From Narcine bancroftii (taxonomy: Eukaryota): a stretch of 64,000 bases of DNA. Positions 6,109-46,827 of the stretch are shown here, in pieces. The DNA is taken from NCBI RefSeq assembly GCF_036971445.1, contig NC_091478.1, forward strand, positions 62,930,001 through 62,994,000, in the 5' to 3' direction. The notes under the pieces were generated by a model that saw only the letters and a program-made list of their open reading frames with translations, was not told where the DNA came from and searched no databases. The position numbers and the translations under genes are program-made. The stretch's first letter is position 1. Every line of letters begins with the position of its first letter.

Positions 6109-6133
6109 ATGGTTCTCCTTCTGCTTCTCCGAG
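6109..6133 (+). CDS. Gene A exon 1: leader peptide MVLLLLLR
   Basis: ATG plus hydrophobic run, phase-1 donor G|GTAATA; 15 nt shorter than the gene B leader. Confidence 0.8.
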
Positions 6134-6249
6134 GTAATATTTAACCAGTACCATTTTGTTCCTTGTTCTACTTATTTAGTTCTCTCTCTTTATCTCCCAT
6201 CTCGATGCCGGCCTCACCGATTTAATTGCGCCATGTTACATTTTCTCAG

Positions 6250-6573
6250 CAGTTGCAGATCAGCGAGGTTTTCATGTAAATCAATTACCCAAAGAAACCA
6301 GTATACCAGTCGGGGGAAATGTTACCTTTTATTGTGTGTTGCCCATCATCCGCGACAAGTCCAGTGTGAAGGTCTACTGGTGGAAGGAGGGTGAGAATGC
6401 ATACCAACACAGCGATGTCGCCAATGGAAAACGATATGGTCTCCGAGGTAGAGCAAGTTGGTACTTTGAGTTGTGCAAAGCAACTGTCCAAGATTCTGGA
6501 GTATATCGCTGTTCCGTCATCGGTCCGGAAATGGTTGCAATCAATGGAAGTGGATCGCGTCTAATTGTTCACG
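6250..6573 (+). CDS. Gene A exon 2: Ig V-set domain, germline-joined VJ type
   Basis: Acceptor TTTTCTCAG and donor G|GTAAAT, phase 1-1, 324 nt. Translates AVADQRGFHVNQLPKETSIPVGGNVTFYCVLPIIRDKSSVKVYWWKEG...YFELCKATVQDSGVYRCSVIGPEMVAINGSGSRLIVH, with B-strand Cys, C-strand Trp, DSGxYxC and J-like GSGSRLIV. Confidence 0.95.
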
Positions 6574-7206
6574 GTAAATCATATTAACGGGAAAAGCAAA
6601 CAGCGAATAACTGTCTGAACAATAAGAAACGGAAAGGCTGGTAGACAGACCATGATTTGTCGATACCCCTCTACCCGCTCAATGAAGATGAGGAAGGCAG
6701 AGATTCTGCCGCCCGTCTCCCAACTCGTACAGTTCGCGGTTAAGTTCATGCCCGCCCGAAGAGTCTTTCTGCAACGTGGCACAAAGCTTTATGGATTCTC
6801 ATTTGTATTGTCTGGTATATTCACCATCCTCACCCAGGCCCCCATCCTATAACTATTTTGTCTGATGTGGATCAAACAACCTGCAAATAAAAGCATTCCT
6901 CAGCCATTCTATACTCAGACGATCATCGCTCCACCATTGTCCGAGTACATTGCGGGAATAATATCGCAAGTTATCAGTAGCAAAAAAACACCATTGAAAA
7001 TGGTGGAAGGAGAAGGCAACCACCCATTCACTCCCCCGCCCCGCACACTCACACACACCTTTAACCTTTCCCTTTTTAATTCGGCGGAGAAGCTCGTTCG
7101 TGCTCATTTTTGTTCATGGAATATTGGTTACTTCCCAATTACTTACAGGAAAGAATTAGTCCGCATTCTGTCTTTCTCACGCAACATTGACAGATTTGTT
7201 TCTTCT

Positions 7207-7452
7207 GGGGCTACACGGTAGGCAAAGCGGTTCGCGCAACGCTGTTAACAGAGGCAGCGACCGGGAACGGGGGTTCGACTCCCGCGCTTTCTCCCAGTGT
7301 CTGCGTGGATTTTTCTCCGGGCTCCGGTTTCCTCCCACAATTGAAAATGTACCAGAATCGTAGGTTAATTTCGTGTAATTGGGCTGCACGGACTTGTGGG
7401 CCGAAATGGCCTGTTATCGTGCTGTAACTTTAAATTTCAATTTTTAAATTTA
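7207..7452 (+). mobile_element. tRNA-derived V-SINE-type element
   Basis: tRNA-like head with B-box GGTTCGACTCC, central GCGTGG..TTCTCCGGGCTCCGGTTTCCTCCCAC, tail GGGCCGAAATGGCCTGTT. Related fragments on the minus strand near 5240-5380 and 39140-39280. Confidence 0.8.
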
Positions 7453-8252
7453 AGCCAGTGTTTGTAAAGTATGATTATTCATACAACACAATTAGTATCG
7501 CAATTTATTATCTTGTTATTAGAATGGAATATGATCCATTATGAATTAAACATTATATGTCTATTTCACATCCGTGACGTGAAATTACGGACCAATGTTC
7601 AATTTCCCAGCGAATCAAAATCCATCATTTTCATTAATTCCAACCGAAAGAAGGAGCTCGAAACCAATTCTTGTTTTGGAGAGTTTTTGCCGCTAACCAT
7701 CCCCAATGTACTAGTGTCATGTTAGTTTGAAAGGTTGCAAAGACAAAATATGCAACTTATATCATTGCAAAGAAACCACTGAATCCACTGTCCTTGCCTT
7801 GGATAAAGAAAGTAACACTACCTGTTGAGTAACAAAATTATTGGCTTTCTTTCAGCAATTGTTATGCCCAGGTTTTCAGTCTAATACTGCCCTCAGTAAC
7901 TCGCTTTATCATCTAAGACATGCGGAATATTCTTCGCTATCAGTGTGCAATAATCACGGAGGAGCTCTCATTATAAAATACCCCGACATCCTCGCACAAA
8001 GTGTTCTTAGTGGATTATTTGGATTACGAATGGGGAAAACGACTTTCTGACGGAGGGTTTGGTTCGGCCTGTATCCCAAATATTCAGATATGTTAGTTAA
8101 GTGAACAGATAACGACTTCTTCTGTTTTACGGGGGATTGGGATTTTCAAATAGCATAATTCGAATTAATAAATGAGACTGGGAAAGAATTGTTTTATAAT
8201 TTCCCAGTCATTGGATTAAATTAATTCAAATCTTTATTTACTCGTATTTCAG

Positions 8253-8549
8253 TGGCGCCAACTCCACTGAAAATCTACTCCAAGACTGTTGATGGGAATC
8301 CACTCACTAGACATGTTCTCGTATGCGAAACGGCTGCATTTTACCCGGAGAATCTCACCCTAATTTGGTACTGAAATGGAACGAAAATCACAGCGGGAAC
8401 TCATACAAGAAAAGAGAAGAACGCGGAGGGACTGTATGTAGTTTCCAGCGATTTAACCTACAGCAACGGCGAGGATCAATATGCCTGCAAGGTATATCAC
8501 CTCTCTCTCCAGACTCCAGCCGTTGCCAGGTATTCTGTTGCGAAACAAG
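8253..8549 (+). pseudogene. Gene A exon 3: Ig C1-set domain with in-frame TGA at 8372-8374
   Basis: Acceptor GTATTTCAG and donor G|GTATGT, phase 1-1, 297 nt. Translates VAPTPLKIYSKTVDGNPLTRHVLVCETAAFYPENLTLIWY*NGTKITAGTHTRKEKNAEGLYVVSSDLTYSNGEDQYACKVYHLSLQTPAVARYSVAKQ. C1 hallmarks: C..FYP, W, N.xG.Y, YxCxVxH. Confidence 0.92.
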
Positions 8550-9008
8550 GTATGTCGTCAACAGTCTAGTGAGTCGTGATTTGTTGTAAATGCCTTGATG
8601 CATTGTATAAATTCTTGCAGTTAATAATTCCGAAATTAAATCATTCAAATTCCATGGGGAAATATCGGATGGAGCATTGATTTCATTTCCAATTTGTAAA
8701 AGAAAACCTGTGCGTCTGAGGCATGGCCAGTCAAATGCCGTTGGCAATCATTTTTTCAAAAAATTGCTGCGCTACAAAAGCATAGAGATATTAATCGTTC
8801 ACGTTTTGTACCCACCTCATTATCATTAGGTTTCTTTTGTTTGCGATTTTAAGTGTGTCAGAGTTTTGCTCTACCACCATCTCTAAACTTCTTGACTTCA
8901 CGATGAAATGGCTGTCTTTTAAAGTATTTAACATTTGTTATAGTTCAAATAAAAATGATTAATCATCATAAGACAGATGAAATATTTAACGTTCCTGATT
9001 CATTTCAG

Positions 9009-9046
9009 ATTTGGGTCCCACGCCCCACACACGTCCCCTTTCATGA
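9009..9046 (+). CDS. Candidate short terminal (secreted tailpiece) exon of gene A, DLGPTPHTRPLS*
   Basis: Acceptor TTCCTGATTCATTTCAG, phase-1 compatible with the C1 exon, 12 hydrophilic codons then TGA. Short, so it could be chance. Confidence 0.35.
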
Positions 9047-10379: not shown

Positions 10380-13090
10380 TTTGGCTGCATTACTAACACA
10401 CTGTTCAGATTGCTAAGCAAGCTCAACTGCACATGGAAAGCTGGCATCTCGTTGACTATGTCATCACCCGACAATGGGACATCTCTGATGTTGGTATCAC
10501 CAGAATTAAGCGTGGAGCTGAGTGCTCAACTGATCATCAAATGGAGTGGTTGGATCTATGTTTATCGATCAAACCTTCAAGCAGACTGATTGCAGCCAAA
10601 CCACCCAAAAAGCTGAACACCACCAAATTGAAACACCGTGAATGTGGCAATGCACCTAAATCCTCCATGGAAACTACACTAAGCAGACTGGTTGAGAATC
10701 CACCAGATGATATTACTGAGCACAAGAATGCTTTCAAAGAAACAACTTATGGCACTGTTTAGGACACTTTGGGGAAAGTCAAGCCCAAACATCAGGATTA
10801 GTTTAATGAGTACAACCAATTTGGCACAAGACCTTCTAATAGCTAAGACAGTTGCACACCAAGCTTGTCTTCAACACCCAAACTCAAGTTCCAAAAAGCA
10901 TGCCTTTTTGAGTGCAAAATCAACTTTGCAGAAGCAGCTCAGAGATTTCCAAGACCAGTGGTGGATGAACAAGGCCAAGGAGTTACAAGCCTTCGCTGAC
11001 TGTAATGACTCAAGAATGAAGCAATCAAGGTTGTCTATGGTCCATCAAAGCAAGGTACCTCACAACTCTTGAGCAAAGACAGTAACTCCATCTTAACTGA
11101 AAAGTCAGAGCACATGAAAAGATGGCAAGAACCCTTCTATGAGCTGTTGGATAGATTAGGAATCATCACCGATGAAGCACTGGGTACCCTCAACTCATAT
11201 TGTTTGAGCCAGATGCTCCCCCCTACTCTTCACAAGGTCATCAAAGCCATCAAACAGCTAAAACCCAACAAAGCACCAGAGCCTAATGGTATTGCAGCTG
11301 AGATCTACCAGTATGGTGGCAACACACTGATATCATGCCAACACCAGCTGTTCACAAAGTTGTGGGAAACTGCAAAACTACCACAAGACTTCAAAGGCGC
11401 ATTAATCCTGACCATCTACAAGAACAAGGGAGGCAAGAAAAATTACAAAAATTATCGTGGACGTCTCTCTTCTGTCAGTTGTGGGAAAATGCCTTGCAGA
11501 GATCACCCCTAGCTGTTTGGTGTCTGACATCAATGACAACATCCTTTCACAAAGCCATTGTGGTTTTCGAGCAGGCCGAAGCAGAGTGGATATGATTTTC
11601 TCACTGAGGCAGCTTCAAGAGAAATGTGTGGAGCAGCAGATAAGTCTCTGTCACATTTGTTGATCTAACCAAAGATGGCCTACAGAAGCTCTTACCAAAT
11701 TTCAGTTGCCCTCCTCCCATGCCTAACCAACATCATCCCTGAATTCCACAAGGTATGGAAGGCTGCATCAATATGTGTGATGAGTTGTCAGACATATTTC
11801 CCATCTCCAATGGTGTAAAACAGGGTTAAGTTTTGGCCCCTACACTGTTTGGACTATTCTTCACAGTTGTTCTTCAAGATGCCACATCAGACCTGAAGTT
11901 AGGGGTCTTCCTAAAAATGAGGGCTGATGATGGGCTTCTCAACCTCGCAAGACTTAGATCAAAAACAAAGGTCAAGGACATAGTTGCGCATGAGCTATAG
12001 TTTGTTGATGACTGTGTACTGGTTGTCCACTCTCTCAAAGACTTACATGAGATCACCAGTCACTTTGCCAGTTCTGCCAAGAGATGCAGATTGACAATCA
12101 GCTTTAAAAAGACAGAAGTTTTTGACCAACTGGCCCCTTGACCAAGTTACGAAGAACCAACTTTCCTCATTGATGACATTCTTCTCAATGCTGCCAACAA
12201 ACTTGGGCAGCACAATAATATCCTCAGCTTCGCTAGATGTAGAGATTGAATCAAGAACCAGAAAGGTTTGCTTTGCTGAAAGATCAGGTTTGGTCAGAGA
12301 GCATCAGGTTGGCCAGCAAGTGCAAGGTGTACAGGGCCACTGTCATATCAGGTATGTCGTCAACAGTCCAGTGAGTCGTGATTTGTTGTAAATGCCTTGA
12401 TGCATTGTATAAATTCTTGCAGTTAATAATTACGAAATTAAATCATTCAAATTTCATGGGGAAGTACTGATTTCATTTCCAATTTGTATGAAAAACTTGT
12501 GCGTCTGAGGCTTGGCCAGTCAAATGCCATTTGCAATCACTTTTTTTTATTTGCTGCACTACAAAAGTATAGAGATATTAATCGTTCACATTTTATACCC
12601 ACCTCATTATCATTAGGTTTCTTCTGTTTGCGATTTTTATATGGATATGAGACATGGTGCCCATATCAGAGTCACTTTTGTCAGATTGACCAACTGTGGC
12701 GGCATCATTACGTTCTCTGATGAAAATCACCTGTGGCGAGACAAGGCCTTCAATATCAAGGTCCTTTCTAGAGCCAGAATGCCAGCAGTTTCATCATTAG
12801 TGATGTCAGGCCAACTGTGCTGGGAAGGACATGTTGTCAAAATGCCTGACAGAAAACTGCCCAAGGACATATTGTAAAGCCAACTGTACCCAAAATTGAG
12901 GAGGCCAGTGACTACAGTACAAGGATGTTCTGCACAAGAGTCATAAGAAAGATGGCATTGCCCCATCAACATGGCTCAAGATTGCTTGCAGTGGAGGGAC
13001 CCCATCAGAAAAGGTTTGCATGCTGTTGGAGAACAAGCTCCAAGAAGCAACAGAGGAAAGGCACAGAAAGCAAGCAGAAGAAGACAATTG
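10380..13090 (+). mobile_element. Old RTE-clade LINE (endonuclease and RT remnants), interrupted at 12350-12637
   Basis: WHLVDYVITR, KAPEPNGIAAEIY, GFRAGRSRVDMIFSLRQLQEKCVEQ, GVKQG..LAPTLF and GHVVKMPDRKLPKDIL, with many frameshifts. Confidence 0.9.
12350..12637 (+). repeat. Third copy of the C1 donor site and first about 290 bp of the downstream intron
   Basis: AGGTATGTCGTCAACAGTCCAGTGAGTCGTGATTTGTTG... aligns to 8548-8850 and 41263-41565. Confidence 0.9.
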
Positions 13091-13294
13091 GCAGAAATTC
13101 TGACAAACTGCAGCTGAATCGACACGTTTTTTAATAAAGACAACTACAATATTACAACGAATTAAAAAGATAACAATGACAAACCAGAGATAGAAAATAA
13201 ATAATCACAATTATGATTGTGCAAGGAAATACATGCAATAGTGTGGACAGCCTTTTTGTGGTGTTGGAGCAGTGAATGATACTTGTAACAAACG

Positions 13295-13660
13295 GGCAGA
13301 ATTTCAAGAGTAAACTCAAAAACAAATCTGTTTCTATTTCTTAAGTTGTCAGGGTGAATTTGTGAGGCCAAAAAAAATTAATGCATCTAAAATTGCATTT
13401 TTTAACAAAAAAATACTATCTGGACTATGAATTATGGATGTTTTACAATTTACATTTGCTTTTTATATGATTGTTTTATTAATTATGTTTAACTATTCAT
13501 ATAATCTCATTATATTTTTATTATTATAAACTTTTCATTAAAATCAATAAAAATATTTTAAAATACAAAAAAGATAATCGCATTTTCCCCTTCCTGAATT
13601 ATGGGTAGCAAACTCTGAGACAATGTCAAATAATGCACTTTAATATAAATTTGGCATTCT
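13295..13660 (+). repeat. Diverged third copy of the receptor upstream/promoter region
   Basis: TTAAGTTGTCAGGGTGAATT..AAATTAATGCAT and TTTTCCCCTTCCTGAATTATGGGTAGCAAACTCTGA align to about 5805-5985; split by an AT-rich insert at about 13400-13580. Confidence 0.75.
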
Positions 13661-15400: not shown

Positions 15401-15618
15401 TGCCTGTTTAATACTGGATGGCATCCATTCCCTTTTGCAGGAACCAATATGTTTCATCGCCAGCCTCTTAAAACACTTCTCTGTGGACGTGTGAGCCACT
15501 GGTCATTAGATTATTAATTGCATCCCAACTCCCACACATACATCAGCTCAGTTCTCAGTCATGGTAAACACAACCATTGTTTGGCCAATAATTCCATATT
15601 ATGCTGTTATTCTTTCAG

Positions 15619-15735
15619 ATTGTGTCTTCATACGTCCTTCCTTGTACATTAGATATGCTGTGGGTTTGACCTTTCTGTTCCTGGCCATCGTTTGCCTTAC
15701 CATTGGGGCGCGTAGTCAATTACCCATTTATAAAG
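15619..15735 (+). CDS. Activating-type transmembrane exon (Arg in TM, stalk Cys)
   Basis: Acceptor TTATTCTTTCAG and donor AAAG|GTACGT, phase 1-1, 117 nt. Translates DCVFIRPSLYIRYAVGLTFLFLAIVCLTIGARSQLPIYK. Confidence 0.8.
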
Positions 15736-16015
15736 GTACGTTAACTAACAGAATTCACTCTCATAGAAAATGCCATGGCATTACGATGGACAATGGGGAG
15801 AGGTTTTATATATATATATATATATATAGTGTGGAAAAATGAGATTTGATTATTATTTTAAATTGAAATTGTGCTGAGACTGGTAATTCTTCCAAAAATC
15901 AACCAATTTAGCATGCAGAATTATGCTATTAAGGGGCACTTGTTGCAGACACACATTTCTGTGAATCAGTGAATGCTTTAACTATGCTTTCTAATTCATC
16001 TCCACTGCTCTGCAG

Positions 16016-16062
16016 GGAGGAAGATTTGTAATTGTGCCACCCCACCATGTGGGACCCAATGA
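16016..16062 (+). CDS. Short cytoplasmic terminal exon GRKICNCATPPCGTQ*
   Basis: Branch-like CTAAT, then TCATCTCCACTGCTCTGCAG acceptor. Phase-1 compatible with the TM exon, stop TGA at 16060-16062, no tyrosine motif. Confidence 0.6.
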
Positions 16063-16969
16063 TTCCCTCAATTATGCATCATTGTAAATGCTCAACTTTG
16101 AAGGATATCGATAACATACAGATATTTTCTCATGTGCAGAATGCATTCATGGTATATTTATTCAAACAGCACACCTGACTTGTAGAAACATACACATCAC
16201 AATGAAAAACATATTTGTCAGGGGAAGTCGTGTATCTCATCCTCATGGTGAAATATATTTCCCGAAGAATATATGAGGGTGTTGCACCATCTTTTGGCAG
16301 ATACTTTATTGGCTGTTTCTGATTCAAATGTAACCAAAAGCAGACTGAAAATTGGAATGATTAATTTGCAGAAAATGTACCTATTTATGGGACTAATTTT
16401 AAATAATCTTTATGTATTGAAGACAGGTGTTTGTACATTTTATTTATGGAGTAATAGGCTTCCTCCAGCCTCTTGCACTAGGCTAATTGCAAAGCACAAT
16501 GTAAAGAGAACTGTTTAAAATATCCGCCGGGACTGAAAAAAGGAATGTAAGGATTTCAATCTCACACTTAGTATTCAACCTGGGTGACTTACAATGCACT
16601 GATGTTACATATTGTATTTGACATTTCAGGTAATCAATATGCTGGTGTTCATTTCTCCCTCCAGCAGGCTTCTACAGTTCCTCTCCACTGGCTCAATAAT
16701 TGGTTTAATCTGACCACATTTTGCTTATCTATTTCAACTTATCCACCAACCATCTTCTCAAAATAATACCAAAGGCTTTCTATAAGAATAAAGAATAGGC
16801 ACAGATTATTTGGTAAATAGGTAACTAATAGAACGCCATTATATTCAACTGTAATATATGACTATATGAGGCATGAGGTATTTGTTGTATGTGGAGTAAA
16901 TACGAAGAATTTCTGATGTGCTGGTTGATGGGGTTTTCATTTCATTGGGCCTTTTCATACATATTACTG

Positions 16970-17431
16970 TCCACGCTGCTGAAGATCCAACTGCGCTGGG
17001 TGGGTCACGTCTCCAGAATGGAGGACCATCGCCTTCCCAAGATCGTGTTATATGGCGAGCTCTCCACTGGCCACCGTGACAGAGGTGCACCAAAGAAAAG
17101 GTACAAGGACTGCCTAAAGAAATCTCTTGGTGCCTGCCACATTGACCACTGCCAGTGGGCTGATATCGCCTCAAACCGTGCATCTTGGCGCCTCACAGTT
17201 TGGCGGGCAGCAACCTCCTTTGAAGAAGACCGCAGAGCCCACCTCACTGACAAAAGACAAAGGAGGAAAAACCCAACACCCAACCCCAACCAACCAAAAT
17301 TCCCCTGCAACCGCTGCAACCGTGTCTGCCTGTCCCGCATCGGACTTGTCAGCCACAAACGAGCCTGCAGCTGACGTGGACATTTACCCCCTCCATAAAT
17401 CTTCGTCCGCGAAGCCAAGCCAAGAAAAGAA
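16970..17431 (+). mobile_element. Young RTE LINE, 5'-truncated 3' end
   Basis: QLRWVGHVSRMEDHRLPKIVLYGELSTG...FPCNRCNRVCLSRIGLVSHKRACS*; tail GAAGCCAAGCCAAGAAAAGAA. Confidence 0.92.
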
Positions 17432-21007: not shown

Positions 21008-21545
21008 GGGATGAGTGCACAAGTGAGTCACACAGGGAGTGGTCCCGACAGAAGACAGAGAGGAAAGGAGAGGGGAAGATGTGTCTAGTGATGGGATCCT
21101 TTTGTAAGTGCCAAAAATTCTGGAGGATAATGTGTTGGATGCAGAGGCTGGTGGAGTGGTAGATGAGGATGAGGAGGGGTCCATGTTTGTTACATCAGGG
21201 GCAGAAGAGGCCAGGGCAGATGAGCAGGAAATGGAGGAGATTTGGGTGAGGGCTGAGTTGATGGTGGTGGGGGAGGTGGGGGGAGGGGGAGAGAGAACCA
21301 CGTTTGTGGAAGAAGACAGACATTTCAGAAGATCTGGACTGGAAGAAATTCATCTTGGGAACAGATACAGCAGAGACAGAGAAATTGAGAGAATGGGATA
21401 GAATTTTTGCTGGGGACAGAGTGAAATTAAGTGTAGTCAAGTTAGTTGTGGGAGTTAGAGGGTTTGTAATGTATGTCGGAGGAACACTTATCTCCCGAGA
21501 TGGAGACAGAGAGATCCAGGAAGGGGAGAGTGTTGTCCCAAGATG

Positions 21546-33012: not shown

Positions 33013-33450
33013 TCTTCTTTTCTTTGGCTTGGCTTCGCGGACGAAGATTTATGGAGGGGGTAAAAGTCCACGTCAGCTGCAGGCTCGTTTGTGGCTGACA
33101 AGTCCAATGTGGGACAGGCAGACACGGTTGCAGCGGCTGCAGGGGAAAATTGGTTGGTTGGGGTTGGGAGTTGGGTTTTTCCTCCTTTGTCTTTTGTCAG
33201 TGAGATGGGCTCTGCGGTCTTCTTGAAAGGAGGTTGCTGCCCGCCGAACTGCGAGGCGCCAAGATGCACGGTTTGAGGCGATATCAGCCCACTGGCGGTG
33301 GTCAATGTGGCAGGCACCAAGAGATTTCTTTAGGCAATCTTTGTACCTCTTCTTTGGTGCAGCTCTGTCACGGTGGCCAGTGGAGAGCTCGCCATATAAC
33401 ACGATCTTGGGAAGGCGATGGTCCTCCATTCTGGAGACGTGACCCACCCA
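33013..33450 (-). mobile_element. Young RTE 3' end
   Basis: ORF 33073-33447, GHVSRMEDHRLPK...SHKRACS. Confidence 0.92.
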
Positions 33451-34280
33451 TTAAGATATAATATTGCAAGCAATGCTTTGTTGAGTTGAATGAATAAGAC
33501 TCAGATGCTCAAATTGAAACATCAAGAGTAAAATTTCATTTTATATTTATTATCTACAACAACAGGTCAAATCATCACATGTTAAATAATGACAGTTACT
33601 AAATATAACCATTTATCTGTTATTGAAACCACACATTTGAATAGCAAAATTAAACGGATATTTAAATTTGGGGTGTCTTTGGTAAGTTTATTAATTATGC
33701 AGCCAAGATTATAAAATCTATTTACATTCAAGTACTGATGCACCTACCCTGCCATTGAGCTAATTAAATGAAAGATGTTCCTGGGTATCAACCTTCATAA
33801 TTGCACATCCACAACATTCAATCTACTTTGAGGCTGCCTCTGTAGTGGCCCTGAAAATTGGTGGACTGCCAGAAATGATCATGTCCTTACACAGGTTGCA
33901 TGCAAGTGTTTTTCTGATAAAACAGAATCACTCATCACCATCCACACCATCAGACCCATGAGCTCCTTCACCGATATCCTAGTCCCGGGTCATGGTTTTC
34001 CTGCTGCTATGATCACGCTTTTCAATTCTGTTAACCAAGTCATTAGCCTGCTGCCTTTCTCACTTAGATTGAAATTATTTCCCCACATCTCATTGATTCC
34101 ACGGCAGTCAAATGCAGATTTGATGCCGAGTTTCCAATTTTCTATAATTTCTGTACCTTACGATCAGCTCAAAACAAATGAGATTCTGCACAGATAATTC
34201 TACATAAACCTATGTGAGCAGAGTTGGTCACAGCCATCTCACACCATTGATATGAAACATTGTATATCCCCTTGTGGGAT

Positions 34281-35381
34281 TCTTTGGCTTGGCTTCGCGG
34301 ACGAAGATTTATGGAGGGGTATGTCCACGTCTGCTGCAGGCTCGTTGTTGACTGACAAGTTCGATGCGGGACAGGCAGGCACAGTTGCAGTGGTTGCAAG
34401 GGAAAATTGGTTGGTTGGGGTTGGGTGTTGGGTTTTTCCTCCTTTGTCTTTTGACAGTGAGGTTGGCTCTGTGGTCTTCTTCAAAGGAGGTTGCTGCCCG
34501 CCGAACTGTGAGGCACCAAGATGCACGGTTGGAGGCGATATCAGCCCACTGACGGTGGTCAATGTGGCAGGCACCAAGAGATTTCTTTAAGCAGTCCTTG
34601 TACCTCTTCTTTGGTGCACCTCTGTCTCAGTGGCCAGTGGAGAGCTCACCATATAACATGATCTTGGGAAGACGATGGTCCTCCATTCTGGAGACGTGAC
34701 CCACCCAGCACAGTTGGGTCTTCAGCAGCATGGATTTGATGCTTGCGGATTCTGCCAGCTCGAGTACTTCGATGTTGGTGTTGAAGTCATTCCAATGAAT
34801 GTTGAGGATGGAGCAGAGACAGCGCTGATTGAAGCTGCAAGCTTACACCAAGACACAAGAGCAACTTGTCCGTGAACTACTCTTTGCAGACGATGCCGCT
34901 TTAGTTGCCCATTCAGAGCCAGCTCTCCAGCGCATGACGTCCTGTTTTGCAGAAACTGCCAAAATGTTTGGCCTGGAAGTTAGCCTGAAGAAAACTGAGG
35001 TCCTCCATCAGCCAGCTCCCCACCATGACTACCAGCCACCCTCCCCACCATGACTACCAGCCACCCCCCACCCCCCACATCTCCATCGGGCACACAGAAC
35101 TCAAAACGGTCAACCAGTTTACCTATCTCGGCTGCACCATTTCATCGGATGCAAGGATCGACAACGAGATAGACAACAGACTCGCCAAGGCAAATATCGC
35201 CTTTGGAAGACTACACAAAAGAGTCTGGAAAAACAACCAACTGAAAAACCTCACAAAGATAAGCGTATACAGAGCCGTTGTCATACCCACACTCCTGTTC
35301 GGCTCCGAATCATGGGTCCTCTACCGGCATCACCTACGGCTCCTAGAACGCTTCCACCAGCGTTGTCTGCACTCCATCCTT
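34281..35381 (-). mobile_element. RTE with inverted 5' segment (3' part minus 34281-34827; upstream RT part plus 34829-35381)
   Basis: The plus segment runs LQAYTKTQE..ELLFADD..FHQRCLHSIL. The minus segment starts at QRCLCSILNIHW and runs to the tail. Confidence 0.85.
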
Positions 35382-37424: not shown

Positions 37425-37712
37425 ATTGACCACCGCCAGTGGGCTGATATCGCCTCAAACCGTGCATCTTGGCGCCTCACAGTTCGGCGGGCAGCAACCT
37501 CCTTTGAAGAAGACCGCAGAGCCCACCTCACTGACAAAAGGCAAAGGAGGAAAAACCCAACACCCAACCCCAACCAACCAATTTTCCCCTGCAACCGCTG
37601 CAACCGTGTCTGCCTGTCCCGCATCGGACTTGTCAGCCACAAACGAGCCTGCAGCTGACGTGGACTTTTACCCCCTCCATAAATCTTCGTCGGCGAAGCC
37701 AAGCCAAAGAAT
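37425..37712 (+). mobile_element. Young RTE 3' end
   Basis: Near-identical to 17141-17425; ATCTTATT flanks both sides. Confidence 0.9.
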
Positions 37713-38910: not shown

Positions 38911-40010
38911 CGCGGTGACCGGATCCGATTCATCATCTCCTCGGGCAGTGAGTTCTACATATTAATGAATCTCCGTGTAAAAAAAAGGATCTTTCAGATC
39001 CCCTTGAAACCTTCCTCGCATCTTGAACCGATGCCCTCCCGTTCTTGATGATCCAACCGACGGAGTAAACCCAATCTGATTATCTACCCTCTCTGTTCTT
39101 CTCATCTCGGCCATATTTCTAACGATAAATATATATACATTTTAAATTTAGCACGGTAACAAGCCCTTTCTGCCCACCAGCGCGCGCCGCCCAATTTATT
39201 CACAATGAACCTATAAAACCCGGTACTTTTCGAACAGTGGGAGGAAGGAAACCATAGACCCGGGGAAAACCCACTCATTCAATGGACGGAAATTCTTTCT
39301 TGTTGCAGCCGAGTTGGTCCTCCGTAAAAAAAGTCACCCGTCCACATTCAATTAAAAAAGAGATAATAATTTCAAGCTGTAGTATGGGATTCGAGGACAA
39401 GAGGGCACAACTTCAGGATAAAAGGGCGTCAATTTAAGAGAAGCGGAATAGTTTCCTTTGCCAGAGGATGGTGAGTCTGTGGAATCCAGATCGTTGGGTA
39501 TATTTAAGGAAGACATTGGCAGGTATTTGATTAGTCAGGGCATCAAGGGTTACGGGGAGAAGACCTGAGAGTGGGGCTGAGTAGGTGGATGGATCAACTC
39601 ATGATAGAATAACGGAGAAGCCTCGATGGGCCTAATTCTGCTCCAAAATCTTGTTATCAATGTAAGAAGCATGATGTTTGAGCATTGCAGGATTAGTGGG
39701 AGAAGGGGGCGTTGTTTCGAGGGGAAATTCATCACAAATCATACTTTCTATATATTAAGTCGTCAAGGTGATTTCAGGAGGGCAAGAAATTAATGCATTT
39801 CAAACTCCTACTTTTCCCCTTCCTCAATTATCGATAGCAAACCCTGAAACGATGTCAACTATTTATTTTGAACATATAAATTCAACATTCCAACGTTCAC
39901 TTCCAGGATGTGATAAGCCCCGGCAACTCGTCATACAACCCAAACGTCAGACGTCGCTTCACATTTAACAGCGTTCCTGACTGCAAGGTCATTTGAATCC
40001 CTTGTGCAGA

Positions 40011-40050
40011 ATGTCAGGGACTGCGATTGTTCTCCTTCTGCTTCTCCGAG
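40011..40050 (+). CDS. Gene B exon 1: leader peptide MSGTAIVLLLLLR
   Basis: AGAATG context, hydrophobic core, phase-1 donor G|GTAATA. Confidence 0.85.
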
Positions 40051-40166
40051 GTAATATTTAACCAGTACCATTTTGTTCCTTGTTCTACTTATTTAGTTCT
40101 CTCTCTTTATCTCCCATCTCGATGCCGGCCTCACCGATTTAATTGCGCCATGTTACATTTTCTCAG

Positions 40167-40490
40167 CAGTTGCAGATCAGCGAGGTTTTCATGTAAATCA
40201 ATTACCCAAAGAAACCAGTATACCAGTCGGGGGAAATGTTACCTTTTATTGTGTGTTCCCCATCATCCGCGACAAGTCCAGTGTGAAGGTCTACTGGTGG
40301 AAGGAGGGTGAGAATGCATACCAACACAGCGATGTCGCCAATGGAAAACGATATGGTCTCCGAGGTAGAGCAAGTTGGTACTTTGAGTTGTGCAAAGCAA
40401 CTGTCCAAGATTCTGGAGTATATCGCTGTTCCGTCATCGGTCCGGAAATGGTTGCAATCAATGGAAGTGGATCACGTCTAATTGTTCACG
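40167..40490 (+). CDS. Gene B exon 2: VJ-type Ig V domain
   Basis: 324 nt. Differs from gene A at two positions by eye (CVF vs CVL, and a silent TCA/TCG); same splice sites. Confidence 0.95.
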
Positions 40491-40993
40491 GTAAATCATA
40501 TTAACGGGAAAGGCAAACAGCGAATAACTGTCTGAACAATAAGAAACGGAAAGGCTGGTAGATAGACCATGATTTGTCGATACCCCTCTACCCACTCAAT
40601 GAGGATGAGGAAGGCAGAGGTTCTGTCGCCCGTCACCCAACCCGTACAGTTCGCGTTTATGTTCATGCCCGCCCGAAGAGGCTCGCTGCAACGTGACACA
40701 AAGCTTTATGGATTCTCATTTGTATTGTCTAGTATATTCACCATCCTCACCCAGGCCCCCATCCTATAACTATTTTGTCTGATGTGGATCAAACAACCTG
40801 CAAATAAAAGCATTCCTCAGCCATTCTATATTCAGAAGATCATCGCTCCACCATTGCCTGAGTACCTTGCGGGAACAATATCACGTTATAAGTAGCAAAA
40901 GGGAACCATTGAAAATTGTGGAAGTAGAAGATAACCACCCATTCACTCCCCCCGCCCCATACACTCAATCATTATCTCTCTGTCTCTTTCTCT

Positions 40994-41151
40994 NNNNNNN
41001 NNNNNNNNNNNNNNNNNNNNNNNNNNNNNNNNNNNNNNNNNNNNNNNNNNNNNNNNNNNNNNNNNNNNNNNNNNNNNNNNNNNNNNNNNNNNNNNNNNNN
41101 NNNNNNNNNNNNNNNNNNNNNNNNNNNNNNNNNNNNNNNNNNNNNNNNNNN
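40994..41151. other. Assembly gap (158 N)
   Basis: N run. The collinear interval in copy A (about 7070-8436) is about 1.4 kb and includes the 5' part of the C1 exon. Confidence 0.99.
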
Positions 41152-41264
41152 TGTAGTTTCCAGCGATTTAACCTACAGCAACGGCGAGGATCAATATGCC
41201 TGCAAGGTATATCACCTCTCTCTCCAGACTCCAGCCGTTGCCAGGTATTCTGTTGCGAAACAAG
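41152..41264 (+). CDS. Gene B exon 3 (visible 3' part): C1-set domain
   Basis: VVSSDLTYSNGEDQYACKVYHLSLQTPAVARYSVAKQ, identical to 8437-8549; donor G|GTATGT. Confidence 0.9.
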
Positions 41265-41838
41265 GTATGTCGTTTAACAGTCCAGTGAGTCGTGATTTGT
41301 TGTAAATGCCTTGATTCATTGTATAAATTCTTGCAGTTAATAATTCCGAAATTAAATCATTCAAATTCCATGGGGAAATATAGGATGGAGCATTGATTTA
41401 ATTTCCAATTTGTATCAAAACCCTGTGCGTCTGAGGCATGGCCACTCAAATGCCGTTGGCAATCATTTTTTCAAAAAATTGCTGCGCTACAAAAGCATAG
41501 AGATATTAATCGTTCATGTTTCATACCCACCTCATTTTCATTAGGTTTCTTTTGTTTTCAATTTTAAGTGTGTCAGAGTTTTGCTCTACCACCATCTCTA
41601 AACTTCTTGTCCTTCTTGGAACTCTTAAATCTGCAGTTTGCTTTGCAAATTAATTTGGACTACATTCAATCAATTTAGAAACTTCGAGTATTAATTATGT
41701 GCACATCATTTGTTCTGTATTTATTGCTATTTTCATGTTCACTCGTGTACAGCGTAATTCCACCCAGTTGTGTTTCAGCCCTATTCTGACCGCTCCACTC
41801 ACAAATGGACAAAGAATGTGTTTAACATGAAAACCTAA

Positions 41839-42615
41839 TGTTACTGAGTCCAGAGGACCCCAAAAACTAGCAGCAATAAATATGCACCACAACACAGTGT
41901 TACTTCAACAAAAGTAGTTTTTACTTGTATTTGAACAATAAAACAGAATTGAACTTTAAATTATTACTTAAATTACCTAATAATTAATACCCCCCCTCCC
42001 CACCCCAATCCCTCTAATACTAAGCGCAGGTGTGTGTAATGTATATTTTAGATTAGAAAGGTTCTTTGGATCACAGTCCAATCTCACTGGTTGCAGGCAA
42101 TTCTTGTACTGTGCACAGATGTTTGCATTAGCAAAGTTCACCAGTCTTTGGTGCTTAGCAGGCAAATGGTTACCACTCAAGAGGGTTCTTGCTGGTTTTC
42201 AGTGATAGATTCCTTTTCTAGACATCCACAACTGATTCCTACTCAATCAGTCTTGCTGACGAACCTTGCCCCCTTTTGGGTTCTCCAGGTGATCCTCTTT
42301 CTTTCAGACCGCCAATCTCCGCCTCTGACCAGACAGCCTTCCAAAGTTTGCCAGCTGCTGCCCCTGGAACGGATTACTGTCTCCTCTCTCTCTGTTTCAC
42401 ATCATCGCTCTCTGAGAGCAACACTCTTCTCTGCCTGCAAAGATATCATAGTCTCCCAGGCAAGCTGCTAACGATACTTTATTGCCTCCTGCAAAGAGCA
42501 TTCTGAAATAGTCCTGCAAATAATCTATGTTTTAATGTGTGTGTGTGTGTGTATGTGTGTGTGTGCAAGCTGCTCTAAGAATTCCTCCCAAACCACCTGT
42601 GAATACTCTGTCACA
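41839..42615. mobile_element. Solo LTR (777 bp) in the C1-TM intron of gene B
   Basis: Starts TGTTAC and ends GTCACA; 4-bp TSD CTAA at 41835-41838 and 42616-42619; partial second copy at 4753-4990. Confidence 0.8.
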
Positions 42616-42652
42616 CTAACAAGTATAATAAATATTCCTTATAACTTTGCAG

Positions 42653-42766
42653 ATTCTCGCAATACACTCGCAAACTACCTGGTTCCTAGTGGCGTGGTGG
42701 TTGGATTACTGATTTTAGTGCTAATGATTGTTGTCGGGGTACGGTTGGGACGACAGGAACTTGAAG
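42653..42766 (+). CDS. Gene B exon 4: uncharged transmembrane segment
   Basis: Acceptor ATAACTTTGCAG and donor GAAG|GTAAGA, phase 1-1, 114 nt. Translates DSRNTLANYLVPSGVVVGLLILVLMIVVGVRLGRQELE. Confidence 0.9.
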
Positions 42767-44394
42767 GTAAGATCTGGATTGAACGCTCGATGTTACTGAA
42801 CACGGAAGAATTGTAAAATTCCTTTAATCTGTTGACAGCTTTGACAAACCGCCGGTCATCCTGAACGAGGAGTTGCCTCTTCTCGGTGACTGAACGTCCG
42901 TTCTCCTTTTCCCAATTCAGATTTTGCCTACTAAGAAGCAATAATGATTGCCATGTTCACCCTAGAACAACTGGAAGAAACTGCAGGGAACAGGATGAAC
43001 CACCAATCAAAGCCACATAATCTGGGAACTGAGAAGAATATGATGAATTCATTTCCAGTTCGACCGAACGCAAAAAGCCACCTCCATTCCATGTATGTTA
43101 CACGTGATGATATGGGAGAGCGACTGGTCTATGCGCTCAGAACAGGCTCAATGGCAATCGAGTGGCATCTAAGGATCGTAGCTCATGCATCCTTCGTTTA
43201 CGACCCTGTTTCTCCTGCAGTTTTGCACTTCACGTCAAACAGGTTTACACTTCATGAGCAGTTAATCCGTCAGGCAATGTGAAAAATATTCGACATTTGT
43301 GGCATTCACACCGGGATCAAGTTTTACAGAAAATATGGTTATAAAGCCGAACTCTGCAGATTATACTTGTGCACTTATGTTGTGAAAGCCAGACTCCCTG
43401 ACTACTTTCATGAAACGTCTGCAAATTTTAAGTAAAGACTCTCAACCAATCTCCTGCTGCTGAACATAACCCAACTCCATGCTCCAACACGGGGCAGAGG
43501 AATATTCTCTATCTCATTCTCCATCAAAGGAAACTCATCTAAGTGTATCCTAATCAGCTCTGCTTCAAATGAAGCTCCCGACCTGAAGAAGAGAATGTTC
43601 AAATTTCAATTCTGGCTCTGGTATAATATACTTTTAGATATCAGTGAGTTCTGCTCTAACCCGCACTTCAGATGTATGGTCGATTTTTTAAAATTAACTT
43701 GCAAACACTTAACAGATAATATGAATGCCCCAATAGGCTAACCAAACCAAAAGCCTTTTAAAACAATATCGTCACCAAAATCTAATTCAAACTCAAGCAA
43801 CATCAATATGTAGAGCTCGTGGTTCGTTTACCTATCACCAGTATCTCCAATGGAGCAGTCTATTCCGAAAGGCGCCCTTGAAAATAATTATCTGGAGCGT
43901 AAGGAAAATAACGCATGGATATTTTCAAAGCGTCCATGAAAACAGCTAACGTTGTGGCAGCTTCATTGCGATTCTGGCATTGAACGATCGAAACATTGTA
44001 AAGAATCACCCAAGAGTCTATGGTGTAAGGAAAAAAAGCTGGTTATCAGTCGGATACAGAAACAAAGGAAATAGTGCAAGCAGCAGGCAATCGTCCATGA
44101 CCCACAAGCTCACACACACAAACTGCCTGTGCAAAGCCTAAATCCACATTCGCTGCACCATTACCTCAGAAACGTACCTGCGGAGCAATGATTCAATTAC
44201 ATTTTCGACTTCAGTCCAATTAAAAAAATGTCATTTGATGGCATTGGTCGCCTTGTTAATGTTTTCCTTCATTTCGGAATTAAACAAAATACCACTGGTA
44301 AAATGAATTTGGGTTCGATTTGAGGATAGAAAAGATGTCACAATGCGAAATACGAAATATTTCCAGCATTTGTCCATTTCCCGAAATATATTTT

Positions 44395-45342
44395 AGAAAC
44401 ATAGAAACATAGAAGATAGGAGCAGGAGTAGGTCATTCGATCCTTCGAGCCTGCTCCGCCATTCAACGAGTATATTGGCTGATCTTAAAGTTCAGTACCC
44501 CGTCCCCGCCTTCTCTCCGTAACCTTTAATACCCTTATACTGAAGAAATATATCTAATTCCCTCTTAAATATATTTAATGAACCTGCCTCCACTGCCCTC
44601 TGTGGCAATGAATTCCACAGATTCACCACCCTCTGGGTAAAGAAATTCCTCCTCCTCTCGGTCCTAAATGGTTTGCCTATTATCCTCAAACCATGGCCCC
44701 GGGTTCTGGATTTTCCCATCATTGGAAACATCCCATCTGCATCCACTCTGTCCAGTCCTGCCAGAATTTTATATGTCTCTATGAGATACCCTCTCAATCT
44801 TCTAAACTCCAGCGAGTACAATCCCAATCTGCGCAATCTTTCCTCATAAGTCATTCCTGCCATTCCAGGTATCAGCCTGGTGAATCTCCTCTGCACTCCC
44901 TCCATTACAAGAACATCCTTCCTTAGATAAGGTGACCAAAACTGCACACAATACTCCAGGTGTGGTCTCACCAAGGCCCTGTACAACTGCAGTAAGGTAT
45001 TCTTGTTCCTATACTCAAACCCTCTTGATATGAAGGCCAACATACCATTTGCCTTTTTAACCGCCTGCTGTACCTGCATGCTCGCCTTCAGAGACTTGTG
45101 TACAAGTACCCCTAGGTCTCTCTGCACTTCCCCATCTCTTAATCTATTGCCATTCAAATAGTAATCTGCCCTCCGGTTTGTATTACCAAAGTGGATAACC
45201 TCACATTTATCCACATTGTAGTGCATTTGCCATGTATCTGCCCAGTCCCTCAATTTATCCAAATCACACTGGAGCTTCCTGACCCCCTCTTCCGTGCACA
45301 AAACCCCTCCGAGCTTAGTGTCGTCTGCAAATTTGGAGATAT
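44395..45342 (-). mobile_element. Young CR1 LINE 3' end in a gene B intron
   Basis: Uninterrupted ORF 44492-45301 (LYRALVRPHLEYCVQFWSP...FFTQRVVNLWNSLP) and (ATGTTTCT)n tail. Confidence 0.95.
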
Positions 45343-45399
45343 CCGCACTGCGAATGATGTTAAACGTTATAATGACATTAAAATTTCGCCTCTTTCAAG

Positions 45400-45443
45400 G
45401 TGAAGAGGAATGTGGGATGGAACCAAATGGCCACCAGGATCAG
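45400..45443 (+). CDS. Gene B exon 5: short cytoplasmic exon GEEECGMEPNGHQDQ
   Basis: Acceptor TTTCGCCTCTTTCAAG and donor CAG|GTATGT. Phase 1 to 0 bridges the TM exon and the terminal exon exactly. Confidence 0.7.
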
Positions 45444-45569
45444 GTATGTCCCTTCATTTATTCATACTGGTCAATGCTGGAAATGCCAAGAAATAGACTG
45501 AATTAGAGCGACTATATTCTGCTCACATTAGAAACTTTACGTATGTTTACCAGAAGTATTAATCGGATT

Positions 45570-46165
45570 CAGAATTTATTGTCATGATCAAGTCATGAAA
45601 TTCGGTATTTTGCAGCAGCATCTTAATGAGAACATGGATATAACCATCTTACGACATTACTATAAAAGTAAAAGAAAGTAATTAAAAACAAAAGTGCAAG
45701 GTAGGTATTTTGGATCATTAAACATTCAGGAATCTGATGGCAGCGGGGATCAAGCTGTCTTGTGCCGTTGAGAGCTCGACTTTAGGCTCCCGTACTTTTC
45801 GCAGATGGTAGTAGAGTGAATCTGGAATGGGCTGTGTGCTGGGTGGTGGGGGGTTCTTAAGGATTGAGGCAGTGTTTTTTTTTTAAAGACACCACCTCAT
45901 GTAGATGTCCGCGATGGTCCCAGACAGAGTTAACAACCCTCTGCAGTTTATTCTTGTCCTGAGAGTTAGTGTCTCCATACCAGGTAGTGATGCAACCAGC
46001 CAGAATGCTCTCCACGGTCCACTTGTGACATGCTCCTCAGACACCTCACAAAGTATAGCCGCTGGCGAACCTTCTTGGTGATTAGATCAACGTGGAGGCT
46101 CCAGGACAGATCCTTGGAGATGTTAACACCCAGGAATTTGAAGTTCTTGATCCGCTCCACAAATC
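45570..46165 (-). mobile_element. Rex1/Babar-like LINE 3' part
   Basis: VERIKNFKFLGVNISKDLSWSLHVDLITKKVRQRLYFVRCL. Confidence 0.8.
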
Positions 46166-46476
46166 CGGTCACAGAGGACTTTTCAAATGGTTATCACAAT
46201 GTCCTTGGTTTCAGCGTTTTCAAGTGTTAAATGTCTGATTAACAGATCAAGGTTCAGTAGCAGTGGTTAAATGTTGGAGATCGTCGCTCTTTGAAACTCT
46301 TCCAAAGTCAAAACTGATAGGTTTAAATAAAATATGATGTTCATCGTGCCATAATATTTGCAACTGTATCCATATATTTATACATGAACTCGTGTCCTTG
46401 ATCTCAAGCCCAGAGCAAACTATTTAAGGATTGACACGGACACTTAGTTGAATAATATTTTTGTCGAACTTTTCAG

Positions 46477-46827
46477 AGAGAAGAGAACAACATGGTACAT
46501 TATGTTGCAATACATTTCGACACGTCCAGGAAGGCCACAAAACAAAAACGTCTTGACGCAAGGCATGCTTTTGATCAGGTGAGTGTAAATAACGGTGTAG
46601 AGAGTTCATTAATTGGATACTATTTCTCAAGCATACGATTTGAGCAGCACATCCCAAAACAAATGAAAAAGCCAAATAGCAGTATTTTCTCAATTGCCTT
46701 TACAGAAAATGCAAGGGGAACCAGCACAGAGTATAGGATAAACTGCAAAGAGAGCACAGAATATGCGGAGGTGAAAACAAAAAAAGACCGCGGAGCAACA
46801 GAGGCGCTTTATTCAACAATAAGATAA
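46477..46827 (+). CDS. Gene B terminal cytoplasmic exon with ITIM/ITSM motifs
   Basis: Acceptor GAACTTTTCAG, phase 0, open to TAA. Translates REENNMVHYVAIHF...STEYAEVKTKKDRGATEALYSTIR*. VHYVAI fits ITIM, TEYAEV fits ITSM, ALYSTI is ITIM-like. Confidence 0.82.
   Translation, partial: REENNMVHYVAIHFDTSRKATKQKRLDARHAFDQVSVNNGVESSLIGYYFSSIRFEQHIPKQMKKPNSSIFSIAFTENARGTSTEYRINCKESTEYAEVKTKKDRGATEALYSTIR

What the first reader, a model, noticed from the sequence alone, without database searches (positions are those of the whole stretch)
6109..46827. Candidate paired activating/inhibitory immune receptor system built on a germline-joined VJ + C1 ectodomain
Seen in sequence: two tandem genes share leader / VJ-type V / C1 exons but have unrelated downstream modules. 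Gene B has an uncharged TM and a tail with VHYVAI, TEYAEV and ALYSTI. Downstream of gene A lies a TM exon with a membrane-proximal Arg (SLYIRYAVGLTFLFLAIVCL) and a 15-aa terminal exon without Tyr. All junctions are phase-compatible with canonical GT-AG sites. Established: near-identical ectodomains with ITIM versus charged-TM ends define paired receptors (KIR, LILR, SIRP, teleost NITR). A single V(J)+C1 ectodomain is the architecture of a TCR chain or Ig light chain. Inference: this is a non-rearranging, antigen-receptor-like paired receptor family in a probable cartilaginous fish. I cannot tell from sequence alone whether it has been described.
Basis: partly seen in the sequence, partly recalled or inferred. 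Interest (0 to 1): 0.95.

Follow-up and report, generated by a model that had tools for sequence, protein, structure and literature searches.

The report
Decayed SIRP-like V-C1 receptor gene pair
Two tandem copies of an electric-ray immune receptor gene with an antigen-receptor-like outer part are real, but the proposed on/off pair is not shown here: one copy carries a stop codon, the "on" module looks like an unexpressed relic, and the expressed copy encodes a shortened "off" tail.

Summary
The sequence observations largely hold. The genome is Narcine bancroftii. Two diverged tandem copies share leader, VJ-type V and C1 exons.

The functional pairing at this locus is not supported.
- Copy A has an in-frame TGA in C1 (8372-8374), a leader shorter by 15 nt, and none of the B-type TM or tail exons downstream.
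- The Arg-TM exon lies 7 kb downstream of A, behind a LINE, a third copy of the post-C1 intron and a decayed promoter copy. It looks like a family TM exon left over from an older gene unit. None of its sampled words occurs in the three RNA runs listed.
- Copy B is transcribed. Removing the 127-nt intron puts TEYAEV and ALYSTI out of frame, so the tail ends KMQGEPAQSIG* with only VHYVAI. A paralogue (P0133) keeps them in frame.
- The 5' 184 nt expected for B's C1 exon lie in the N gap, which was not filled.

At family level the idea holds. Chondrichthyan gene models, auto-named SIRP-alpha-like or tapasin-related-like, include both Arg-TM/short-tail and ITIM/ITSM forms. The scan had already found this family on neighbouring DNA.

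The parts
6109..6133 (+). Gene A leader exon (MVLLLLLR, phase 1). It lacks 15 nt that B's leader has.
6250..6573 (+). Gene A V exon, VJ-type. V and the J-like G strand NGSGSRLIV are in one exon.
   Evidence: Pfam V-set E 1.9e-7. 322 of 324 nt identical to B. No RSS heptamer nearby.
8253..8549 (+). Gene A C1 exon (297 nt, phase 1/1), interrupted by an in-frame TGA at 8372-8374.
   Evidence: Pfam C1-set on 8375-8548. Paralogue P0133 has Arg at this position (IWYRNG).
12350..12637 (+). Third, older copy of the post-C1 intron. It starts at the position equivalent to the exon/intron boundary and directly follows LINE sequence.
   Evidence: 88.8% identical to 8548-8850 and 86.5% to 41263-41565
13259..13659 (+). 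Decayed copy of the region upstream of the leader (promoter relic). No leader, V or C1 follows it.
   Evidence: 69-77% identical to 5770-5980 and 39672-39890. tblastn finds no further V or C1 copy.
15619..15735 (+). Arg-bearing TM exon (DCVFIRPSLYIRYAVGLTFLFLAIVCLTIGARSQLPIYK+G, phase 1/1). Probably a relic of an activating-type paralogue.
   Evidence: Best local score against family tails is 46, versus 34±4 for shuffles; 6 of 300 shuffles reach it. No words held in the RNA runs.
16016..16062 (+). Short terminal exon after the Arg-TM exon (G RKICNCATPPCGTQ*).
40011..40050 (+). Gene B leader exon (MSGTAIVLLLLLR, phase 1).
   Evidence: Matches NCBI models P0002 and P0124.
40167..40490 (+). Gene B V exon, VJ-type.
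   Evidence: Pfam V-set E 9.7e-8. 100% identical to P0002 residues 14-120.
40994..41151 (.). Assembly gap. It hides part of the V-C1 intron and the expected 5' 184 nt of B's C1 exon. Not filled.
41152..41264 (+). Gene B C1 exon, readable 3' part. Identical to A at 113 of 113 nt.
   Evidence: RNA joint 41264|42653 in three runs.
42653..42766 (+). Gene B TM exon with an uncharged core (…VPSGVVVGLLILVLMIVVGVRLGRQELE+G).
   Evidence: RNA joints on both sides.
45400..45443 (+).
   Evidence: Present in the NCBI models. RNA joints 42766|45400 and 45443|46477.
46477..46578 (+). Gene B ITIM exon (REENNMVHYVAIHFDTSRKATKQKRLDARHAFDQ).
   Evidence: RNA contigs match with 0 mismatches.
46706..46741 (+). 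Coding part of gene B's last exon as spliced (KMQGEPAQSIG*). The transcript continues to at least 46900.
   Evidence: RNA joint 46578|46706 in three runs.
46742..46827 (+). Remains of the conserved ITSM and terminal Tyr motifs (TEYAEV, ALYSTI). They are out of frame in B's spliced mRNA and in frame in paralogue P0133.

Best explanation
The window holds two units of a tandem array, about 34 kb per unit, of a receptor gene family found here mainly in chondrichthyans. The gene structure is leader, germline-joined VJ-type V, one C1, TM, then cytoplasmic tail.

**Copy B** is transcribed and spliced. It should give a type I membrane protein with an uncharged TM and a tail carrying one ITIM (VHYVAI). 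Its conserved distal ITSM and terminal Tyr motifs are frameshifted out, because its last exon is about 10 nt shorter than that of paralogue P0133. By inference it is a weakened inhibitory receptor: after tyrosine phosphorylation its ITIM would recruit an SH2 phosphatase.

**Copy A** is a pseudogene or a null allele. It has a nonsense codon in C1 (probably CGA to TGA), a shortened leader, and none of the B-type TM or tail exons downstream. Its leader-to-V tract has been kept identical to B's by gene conversion.

**The Arg-TM exon and short-tail exon** 7 kb downstream are the remnant of an older activating-type paralogue whose ectodomain exons were lost. In intact relatives the Arg would pair with an acidic adaptor chain; this is inferred, not shown.

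The locus is therefore a decaying piece of a paired-receptor gene family, not a working pair.
For: **Species and gene models**
- P0002 and P0124 are the NCBI Narcine bancroftii models of gene B.

**Gene A defects**
- In-frame TGA in C1. Paralogue P0133 has Arg at that position.
- 15-nt leader deletion.
- No protein-level trace of a B-type TM or tail elsewhere in the window.
- Similarity to B ends at 8894.
- No A-derived protein model appeared among database hits.

**Relics between A and the Arg-TM exon**
- A third copy of the post-C1 intron and a promoter relic.

**Gene conversion**
- The leader intron is identical at 116 of 116 positions and the V exon at 322 of 324. Flanking sequence is 90-94% identical.

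**Gene B RNA**
- Four GT..AG joints appear in all three runs.
- One 564-nt contig spans the C1 3' part through to the last exon with 0 mismatches and no indel.
- The resulting frame ends KMQGEPAQSIG*.
- P0133 reads KMQGEPRGTSTEY…TEYAEV…ALYSTIR*.
- The same C-terminal motif series is conserved across the family.

**Arg-TM module**
- Phase 1/1, and it ends in K+split Gly like the family's TM exons.
- Similarity to family tails exceeds shuffles.
- 0.00 of its sampled words are held by the RNA runs.
Against: - The TGA rests on a single assembly.
- All of A's splice sites are intact. The C1 exon is symmetric (297 nt, phase 1/1), so skipping it would keep the frame.
- The Arg-TM and terminal exons are open and have canonical splice sites.
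- Only three small runs of unknown tissue, kept as contigs, were available. Contigs drop rare isoforms, so absence of Arg-TM words is weak evidence.
- The 10-nt difference from P0133 is deduced from protein sequences, not from its DNA.
- Half of B's C1 exon is unread.
Confidence: 0.68

Rival explanations
1. One reading: A and B are a working pair. A's leader-V-C1 is spliced across 7 kb to the Arg-TM exon to make an activating receptor. B is the ITIM/ITSM inhibitory partner.
For: - Near-identical ectodomain exons.
- Canonical phase-compatible splice sites at 8549, 15619, 15735 and 16016.
- Arg-TM/short-tail members with V-C1 ectodomains exist in relatives, for example P0004.
Against: - In-frame TGA in A's C1 exon.
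- Relics of other gene units lie between C1 and the Arg-TM exon.
- No Arg-TM words are held by the RNA runs in which B is detected.
- B's tail is truncated to a single ITIM.
Confidence: 0.1
2. A makes a V-only activating receptor. The C1 exon carrying the TGA is skipped (297 nt, phase 1/1), joining V directly to the Arg-TM exon. The product would have an NKp30-like architecture.
For: - Exon symmetry and intact splice sites.
- The conversion-maintained V exon is intact.
Against: - No RNA support for the Arg-TM module.
- A's leader is shortened.
- The V exon's identity to B extends across the intron, which points to gene conversion and not to selection.
Confidence: 0.1
3. The A/B duplication is an assembly artefact, such as an allelic haplotig placed in tandem or a collapse near the gap.
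For: - There is an N gap inside B.
- The exons are nearly identical.
Against: - The flanks are only 90-96% identical and carry many indels.
- The downstream content differs entirely between the copies.
- A third distinct paralogue exists on the same record.
- B-specific RNA contigs match exactly.
Confidence: 0.04

Closest known systems
SIRP family (SIRP-alpha and SIRP-beta; PDB 2wng)
   Same: - N-terminal V domain with a J-like strand, followed by a C1-set domain.
- The family contains both ITIM-tailed and charged-TM/short-tailed members.
- NCBI auto-names many relatives 'tyrosine-protein phosphatase non-receptor type substrate 1-like' or 'signal-regulatory protein beta-1-like'.
- The family profile hits SIRP-alpha at E 2e-30.
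   Different: - One C1 domain, not two.
- The TM charge is Arg, near the outer face.
- The V exon alone finds shark IgNAR V and PD-L1 V ahead of SIRP.
- An IgA1 heavy chain and UrIg2 score higher than SIRP with the profile.
- Orthology and synteny were not tested.
UrIg / UrIg2 (elasmobranch non-rearranging antigen-receptor-like genes; PMC12227049)
   Same: - Elasmobranch genes with a split leader and a VJ domain encoded in one exon, followed by C1-type domains.
- UrIg2 (PDB 9dmx) is the second-best hit of the family profile in PDB, at E 4e-35.
   Different: - The paper describes nurse-shark UrIg2 with nine C1-type domains and epaulette-shark UrIg2 with eleven. UrIg's three N-terminal C domains are paralogous to UrIg2's.
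- Here there is a single C1 followed by a TM and a signalling tail.
- This is a multigene cluster.
- 'ITIM' and 'SIRP' do not occur in that paper's main text, and 'paired' occurs only in 'paired-end reads'.
Ig light chain / TCR chain
   Same: - One V(J) domain plus one C1 domain.
- The AlphaFold model of relative P0005 finds Fab light chains as the top Foldseek matches, at E about 1e-15.
   Different: - No rearrangement: V and the J strand are contiguous in one exon, with no RSS heptamer.
- The chain has its own TM and an ITIM tail.
NKp30 (NCR3)
   Same: - A non-rearranging VJ-type V domain.
- An Arg near the outer end of the TM in the activating-type exon. This resemblance is from memory and was not tested.
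   Different: - NKp30 has no C1 domain, whereas A and B have a C1 exon.
- No sequence search here returned NKp30.

Membership tests
Paired activating/inhibitory receptor pair (at this locus) | Two genes with closely similar ectodomains | tested here: met
   The V exons are 99.4% identical in nt. The readable part of C1 is 100% identical.
Paired activating/inhibitory receptor pair (at this locus) | An intact activating partner with a charged TM and short tail, joined to that ectodomain | tested here: not met
   TGA in A's C1 exon. The Arg-TM exon lies behind relics of other gene units. No RNA words are held for it. The junction itself could not be tested with reads.
Paired activating/inhibitory receptor pair (at this locus) | An inhibitory partner with an ITIM-bearing tail that is expressed | tested here: met
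   B is spliced in three runs. VHYVAI is in frame, but the distal ITSM and Tyr motifs are frameshifted out.
Paired receptor family (chondrichthyan V-C1 family as a whole) | Both signalling types share similar ectodomains within a species | tested here: met
   Gene models only. Mobula P0152 (Arg-TM) is 76-77% identical to P0143 and P0150 (ITIM). Heptranchias P0160 is 93% identical to P0144 over C1.
SIRP family | V-C1-C1 ectodomain | tested here: not met
   There is a single C1 exon between V and TM in A, in B's RNA contigs and in the relatives.
SIRP family | Specific sequence affinity or orthology to SIRP | tested here: inconclusive
   The profile hits SIRP-alpha at 2e-30, but an IgA1 heavy chain and UrIg2 score higher. 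The V exon alone prefers IgNAR V and PD-L1 V. No tree or synteny analysis was done.
SIRP family | CD47 binding | not testable with these tools
   This needs binding assays.
Rearranging antigen receptors (TCR, IgL) | V exon ends in an RSS, with a separate J segment | tested here: not met
   The J-like strand is contiguous with V in one exon. There is no CACAGTG in or beside either V exon.
UrIg / UrIg2 | VJ domain followed by several C domains | tested here: not met
   There is one C1 exon and then a TM exon. UrIg architecture is taken from PMC12227049.
NKp30 / NCR3 | A single VJ domain directly followed by stalk and TM, with no C domain | tested here: not met
   A C1 exon is present, and in B's transcripts it is spliced to the TM exon.

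The most novel reading that the evidence does not exclude
The chondrichthyan one-V(J)/one-C1 membrane receptor family has both Arg-TM and ITIM/ITSM members and undergoes rapid birth, death and gene conversion, as seen here. It could be a surviving non-rearranging lineage close to the single-chain precursor of TCR and Ig light chains, distinct from SIRP, UrIg and NKp30. Its activating members might signal through adaptors such as DAP12, FcR-gamma or CD3-zeta. I found no paper describing it in the library searched.
Probability: 0.2. Interest if true: 0.8.

Novelty: new member of a known kind. Interest (0 to 1): 0.45.

Why it matters
Non-rearranging genes with a VJ-type V and a C1 domain are candidate relatives of the gene that the RAG transposon invaded. 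A clustered family of such genes in sharks, rays and chimaeras, with both inhibitory and activating wiring, deserves proper description. Public annotations label it inconsistently as SIRP-alpha-like, tapasin-related-like, CD276 homolog, MHC class II beta-like or FcRn-like.

This locus adds a picture of how the family turns over. It shows tandem units of about 34 kb, gene conversion across leader and V, a nonsense mutation, a frameshifted tail, and orphaned TM exons. It is not itself a working pair, so it is a poor choice for functional tests. Intact paralogues would serve better.

Tried and rejected
**Searches within the window**
- Nucleotide and protein-level searches for a B-type TM or tail near A, or an Arg-TM exon near B, found nothing.

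**Database searches**
- The search for homologous proteins with P0124 and P0133 returned only the Narcine models and one Heterodontus protein, because the tool depends on shared words.
- The profile search returned no further Narcine paralogues, so Arg-TM members in Narcine itself were not shown.
The locus of P0133 and the DNA of its last exon could not be read, so the roughly 10-nt difference is deduced from protein sequence.

**Literature**
The library is incomplete, so this is not proof that the family is undescribed.

**RNA**
- Only three runs were listed, all kept as contigs and of unknown tissue.

**Structure**
- Foldseek gave only generic Fab light-chain matches.

- No search or fold was done with a joined (spliced) model of A or B. 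Exons were searched one by one, by reference.
- A's C1 exon was searched as two pieces on either side of the stop.
- The N gap was not filled.

**Rejected idea**
- Assembly artefact, because of the 4-10% divergence, the different downstream content, and a third paralogue.

Full report
**Identity of the DNA**

The window is 40.5% G+C, with one N run at 40994-41151. The product of gene B's V exon is 100% identical to P0002. P0002 is NCBI XP_069755609.1, an 'uncharacterized protein' of Narcine bancroftii, the lesser electric ray, on a 108.75-Mb record. The rest of the window is retroelement sequence: LTR-type RT/RNase H and several LINE reverse transcriptases.

**The duplication**

A self-comparison gives two collinear blocks:
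- 5126-7051 matches 39025-40967 at 90.3% identity.
- 8437-8894 matches 41152-41609 at 96.3% identity.

Identity is uneven along the alignment.

| Segment | Identity A vs B |
|---|---|
| Upstream sequence | 90-93% |
| Leader exon | 25 of 25, apart from a 15-nt deletion in A |
| Leader intron | 116 of 116 |
| V exon | 322 of 324 |
| Intron after V | 92-94% |
| Readable C1 3' part | 113 of 113 |
| Intron after C1 | 95.6% |

An intron that is perfectly identical inside diverged flanks points to gene conversion and not to selection. The divergence, the indels and the different downstream content argue against an assembly duplicate.

**Exon anatomy of A**

- Leader: 6109-6133.
- V: 6250-6573.
- C1: 8253-8549.

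All have canonical splice sites in phase 1. Pfam calls V-set on the V exon and C1-set on the second half of C1. The V exon carries the J-like strand NGSGSRLIV, and no consensus RSS heptamer lies in or beside it.

The C1 exon has an in-frame TGA at 8372-8374 (…LTLIWY*NGTKI…). Paralogue P0133 has Arg at that position (IWYRNG), so the change was probably CGA to TGA.

After 8894, A loses all similarity to B. No B-type TM or tail is detectable at protein level anywhere else in the window.

**What lies between A and the Arg-TM exon**

- A LINE on the + strand runs up to about 12350.
- At 12350-12637 there is a third, more diverged copy of the post-C1 intron. It is 88.8% identical to A and 86.5% to B, and it begins at the position equivalent to the exon/intron boundary.
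- At 13259-13659 there is a 69-77% identical copy of the sequence that lies 130-340 nt upstream of the A and B start codons. No leader, V or C1 follows it.
- The Arg-TM exon follows at 15619-15735, then a terminal exon at 16016-16062.

The Arg-TM module resembles the family's TM exons. It is phase 1/1 and ends in Lys plus a split Gly codon. Its best local score against family tails is 46, compared with 34±4 for shuffles; 6 of 300 shuffles reach that score. By eye, its R-Y-x-V-G…GAR pattern matches the Arg-TM of catshark P0004.

I read this stretch as a graveyard of older gene units. The Arg-TM module would be the orphaned 3' end of an activating-type paralogue.

**Gene B**

| Exon | Coordinates |
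|---|---|
| Leader | 40011-40050 |
| V | 40167-40490 |
| C1 (readable 3' part) | 41152-41264 |
| TM | 42653-42766 |
| Mini exon | 45400-45443 |
| ITIM exon | 46477-46578 |
| Last exon | from 46706 |

The 5' 184 nt expected for the C1 exon lie in the gap. The NCBI models P0002 and P0124 skip C1, evidently because of the gap, but they contain all the later exons.

**RNA evidence**

Only three runs of this species were listed. They are stored as contigs, and their RNA nature was a guess. Laid on 41152-46900, they show GT..AG joints in all three runs at 41264|42653, 42766|45400, 45443|46477 and 46578|46706. One 564-nt contig covers the C1 3' part through to the last exon with no mismatch and no indel. 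The runs therefore contain spliced RNA, and B is transcribed.

Another contig extends 184 nt to the left of 41152. That is exactly A's 297-nt C1 exon length minus the 113 nt read in B. I did not look at or fill any gap letters.

None of the 84 sampled words of 15500-16300, the Arg-TM module, occurs in these runs. This is weak negative evidence.

**B's tail**

The intron 46579-46705 is 127 nt long, which is not a multiple of three. Its donor is a perfect AGGTGAGT, and its acceptor has the best pyrimidine tract in the region.

Spliced as observed, the frame gives KMQGEPAQSIG and stops at 46739-46741. TEYAEV and ALYSTI fall in the other frame.

P0133 has the same exons but reads KMQGEPRGTSTEYRINCKESTEYAEVKTKKDRGATEALYSTIR*. 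That implies about 10 more nucleotides in its last exon. The motif series …TEYAE[VIL]…TEAxY… at the C-terminus is conserved across the family.

So B has probably lost its distal motifs recently and keeps one ITIM.

**The family**

An HMMER scan of 1.84 billion representative proteins with B's V exon gave 44 hits at E ≤ 1e-10. Most of the hits inspected at this level have the architecture leader-V-C1-TM-tail; the list also includes long multi-domain proteins and some short or partial models. The members whose source was looked up come from Hypanus, Hemitrygon, Scyliorhinus, Mustelus, Heterodontus, Heptranchias, Mobula and Callorhinchus, and from Pristis and Stegostoma.

A profile search found no comparable V-C1 protein outside chondrichthyans. 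The next hits were reptile multi-V proteins. That search depends on shared words, so this is only suggestive.

Source names are inconsistent: SIRP-alpha-like, SIRP-beta-1-like, tapasin-related-like, CD276 homolog, class II beta-like, lambda light chain-like and FcRn-like.

Sorting members by TM and tail shows both signalling types:
- Many have an uncharged TM and tails of 75-150 residues with ITIM and ITSM motifs.
- A second set has Arg in the outer TM and tails of 5-40 residues without such motifs.

Both types share chromosome-scale records in Heptranchias, Mobula and Mustelus. Within-species pairs reach 76-77% identity over the ectodomain (Mobula) and 93% over C1 (Heptranchias). These are gene models, not verified transcripts.

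**Relation to known families**

- B's V exon alone is closest to shark IgNAR V and PD-L1 V among solved structures.
- The C1 piece matches beta-2-microglobulin, light-chain C and class I alpha-3.
- The family profile hits an IgA1 heavy chain, UrIg2 (9dmx, 4e-35) and SIRP-alpha (2wng, 2e-30).
- An AlphaFold model of relative P0005 has an ectodomain pLDDT mostly around 90 or above. Its best Foldseek matches are Fab light chains.

The ectodomain is therefore shaped like one antigen-receptor chain, while the wiring resembles SIRP. [quoted passage not shown] 'ITIM' and 'SIRP' do not occur in that paper's main text, and 'paired' occurs only in 'paired-end reads'.

Six literature searches found no description of this family. 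The library is incomplete. The scan's own earlier notes list several more such genes in this genome, including one 11 kb beyond the window's end.

**Limits**

Exons were handled one by one, by reference.
- The gap was not filled.

**Verdict**

The sequence features are real. The family-level inference is sound. The specific claim of a working activating/inhibitory pair at 6109-46827 is not supported.

Noticed in passing
window 6109-6573 vs 40011-40490: There is a gene-conversion tract. The leader intron is identical at 116 of 116 positions and the V exon at 322 of 324, while the flanks are 90-94% identical. The only leader difference is a 15-nt in-frame indel.
   Followed up: yes
window 25029-29706 vs 48864-53117: Collinear repeat blocks, 84-92% identical and rich in LINE sequence, lie downstream of both gene units. 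The offset is about 23.8 kb here, against 33.9 kb for the gene exons. The A unit therefore carries about 10 kb of extra sequence between its C1 exon and this block.
   Followed up: partly
window 1762-3003 (-): A 413-aa ORF with RVT_1 and RNase H-like domains, indicating an LTR-type retroelement pol. Further LINE reverse-transcriptase ORFs lie at 20340-21017, 48640-49359 and 57573-58691.
   Followed up: partly
window 16970-17430, 26697-27321, 33016-33450, 34280-34835, 37425-37711, 57258-57885: At least six copies, 91-97% identical, of a repeat of about 450-600 bp occur in both orientations. It appears to be the 3' part of a young LINE family.
   Followed up: no
window 6640-6800 and 40580-40766: NCBI model P0133 of the third paralogue starts at a Met inside the sequence equivalent to the V-C1 intron and omits the V exon. 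That gene's annotation therefore looks truncated at its 5' end.
   Followed up: partly
window 41728-42495 and 44224-46335: Very high summed contig depth, from hundreds to more than 100,000, in the RNA runs falls over intronic repeats of gene B. This reflects transcribed repeat families, not gene B itself.
   Followed up: no
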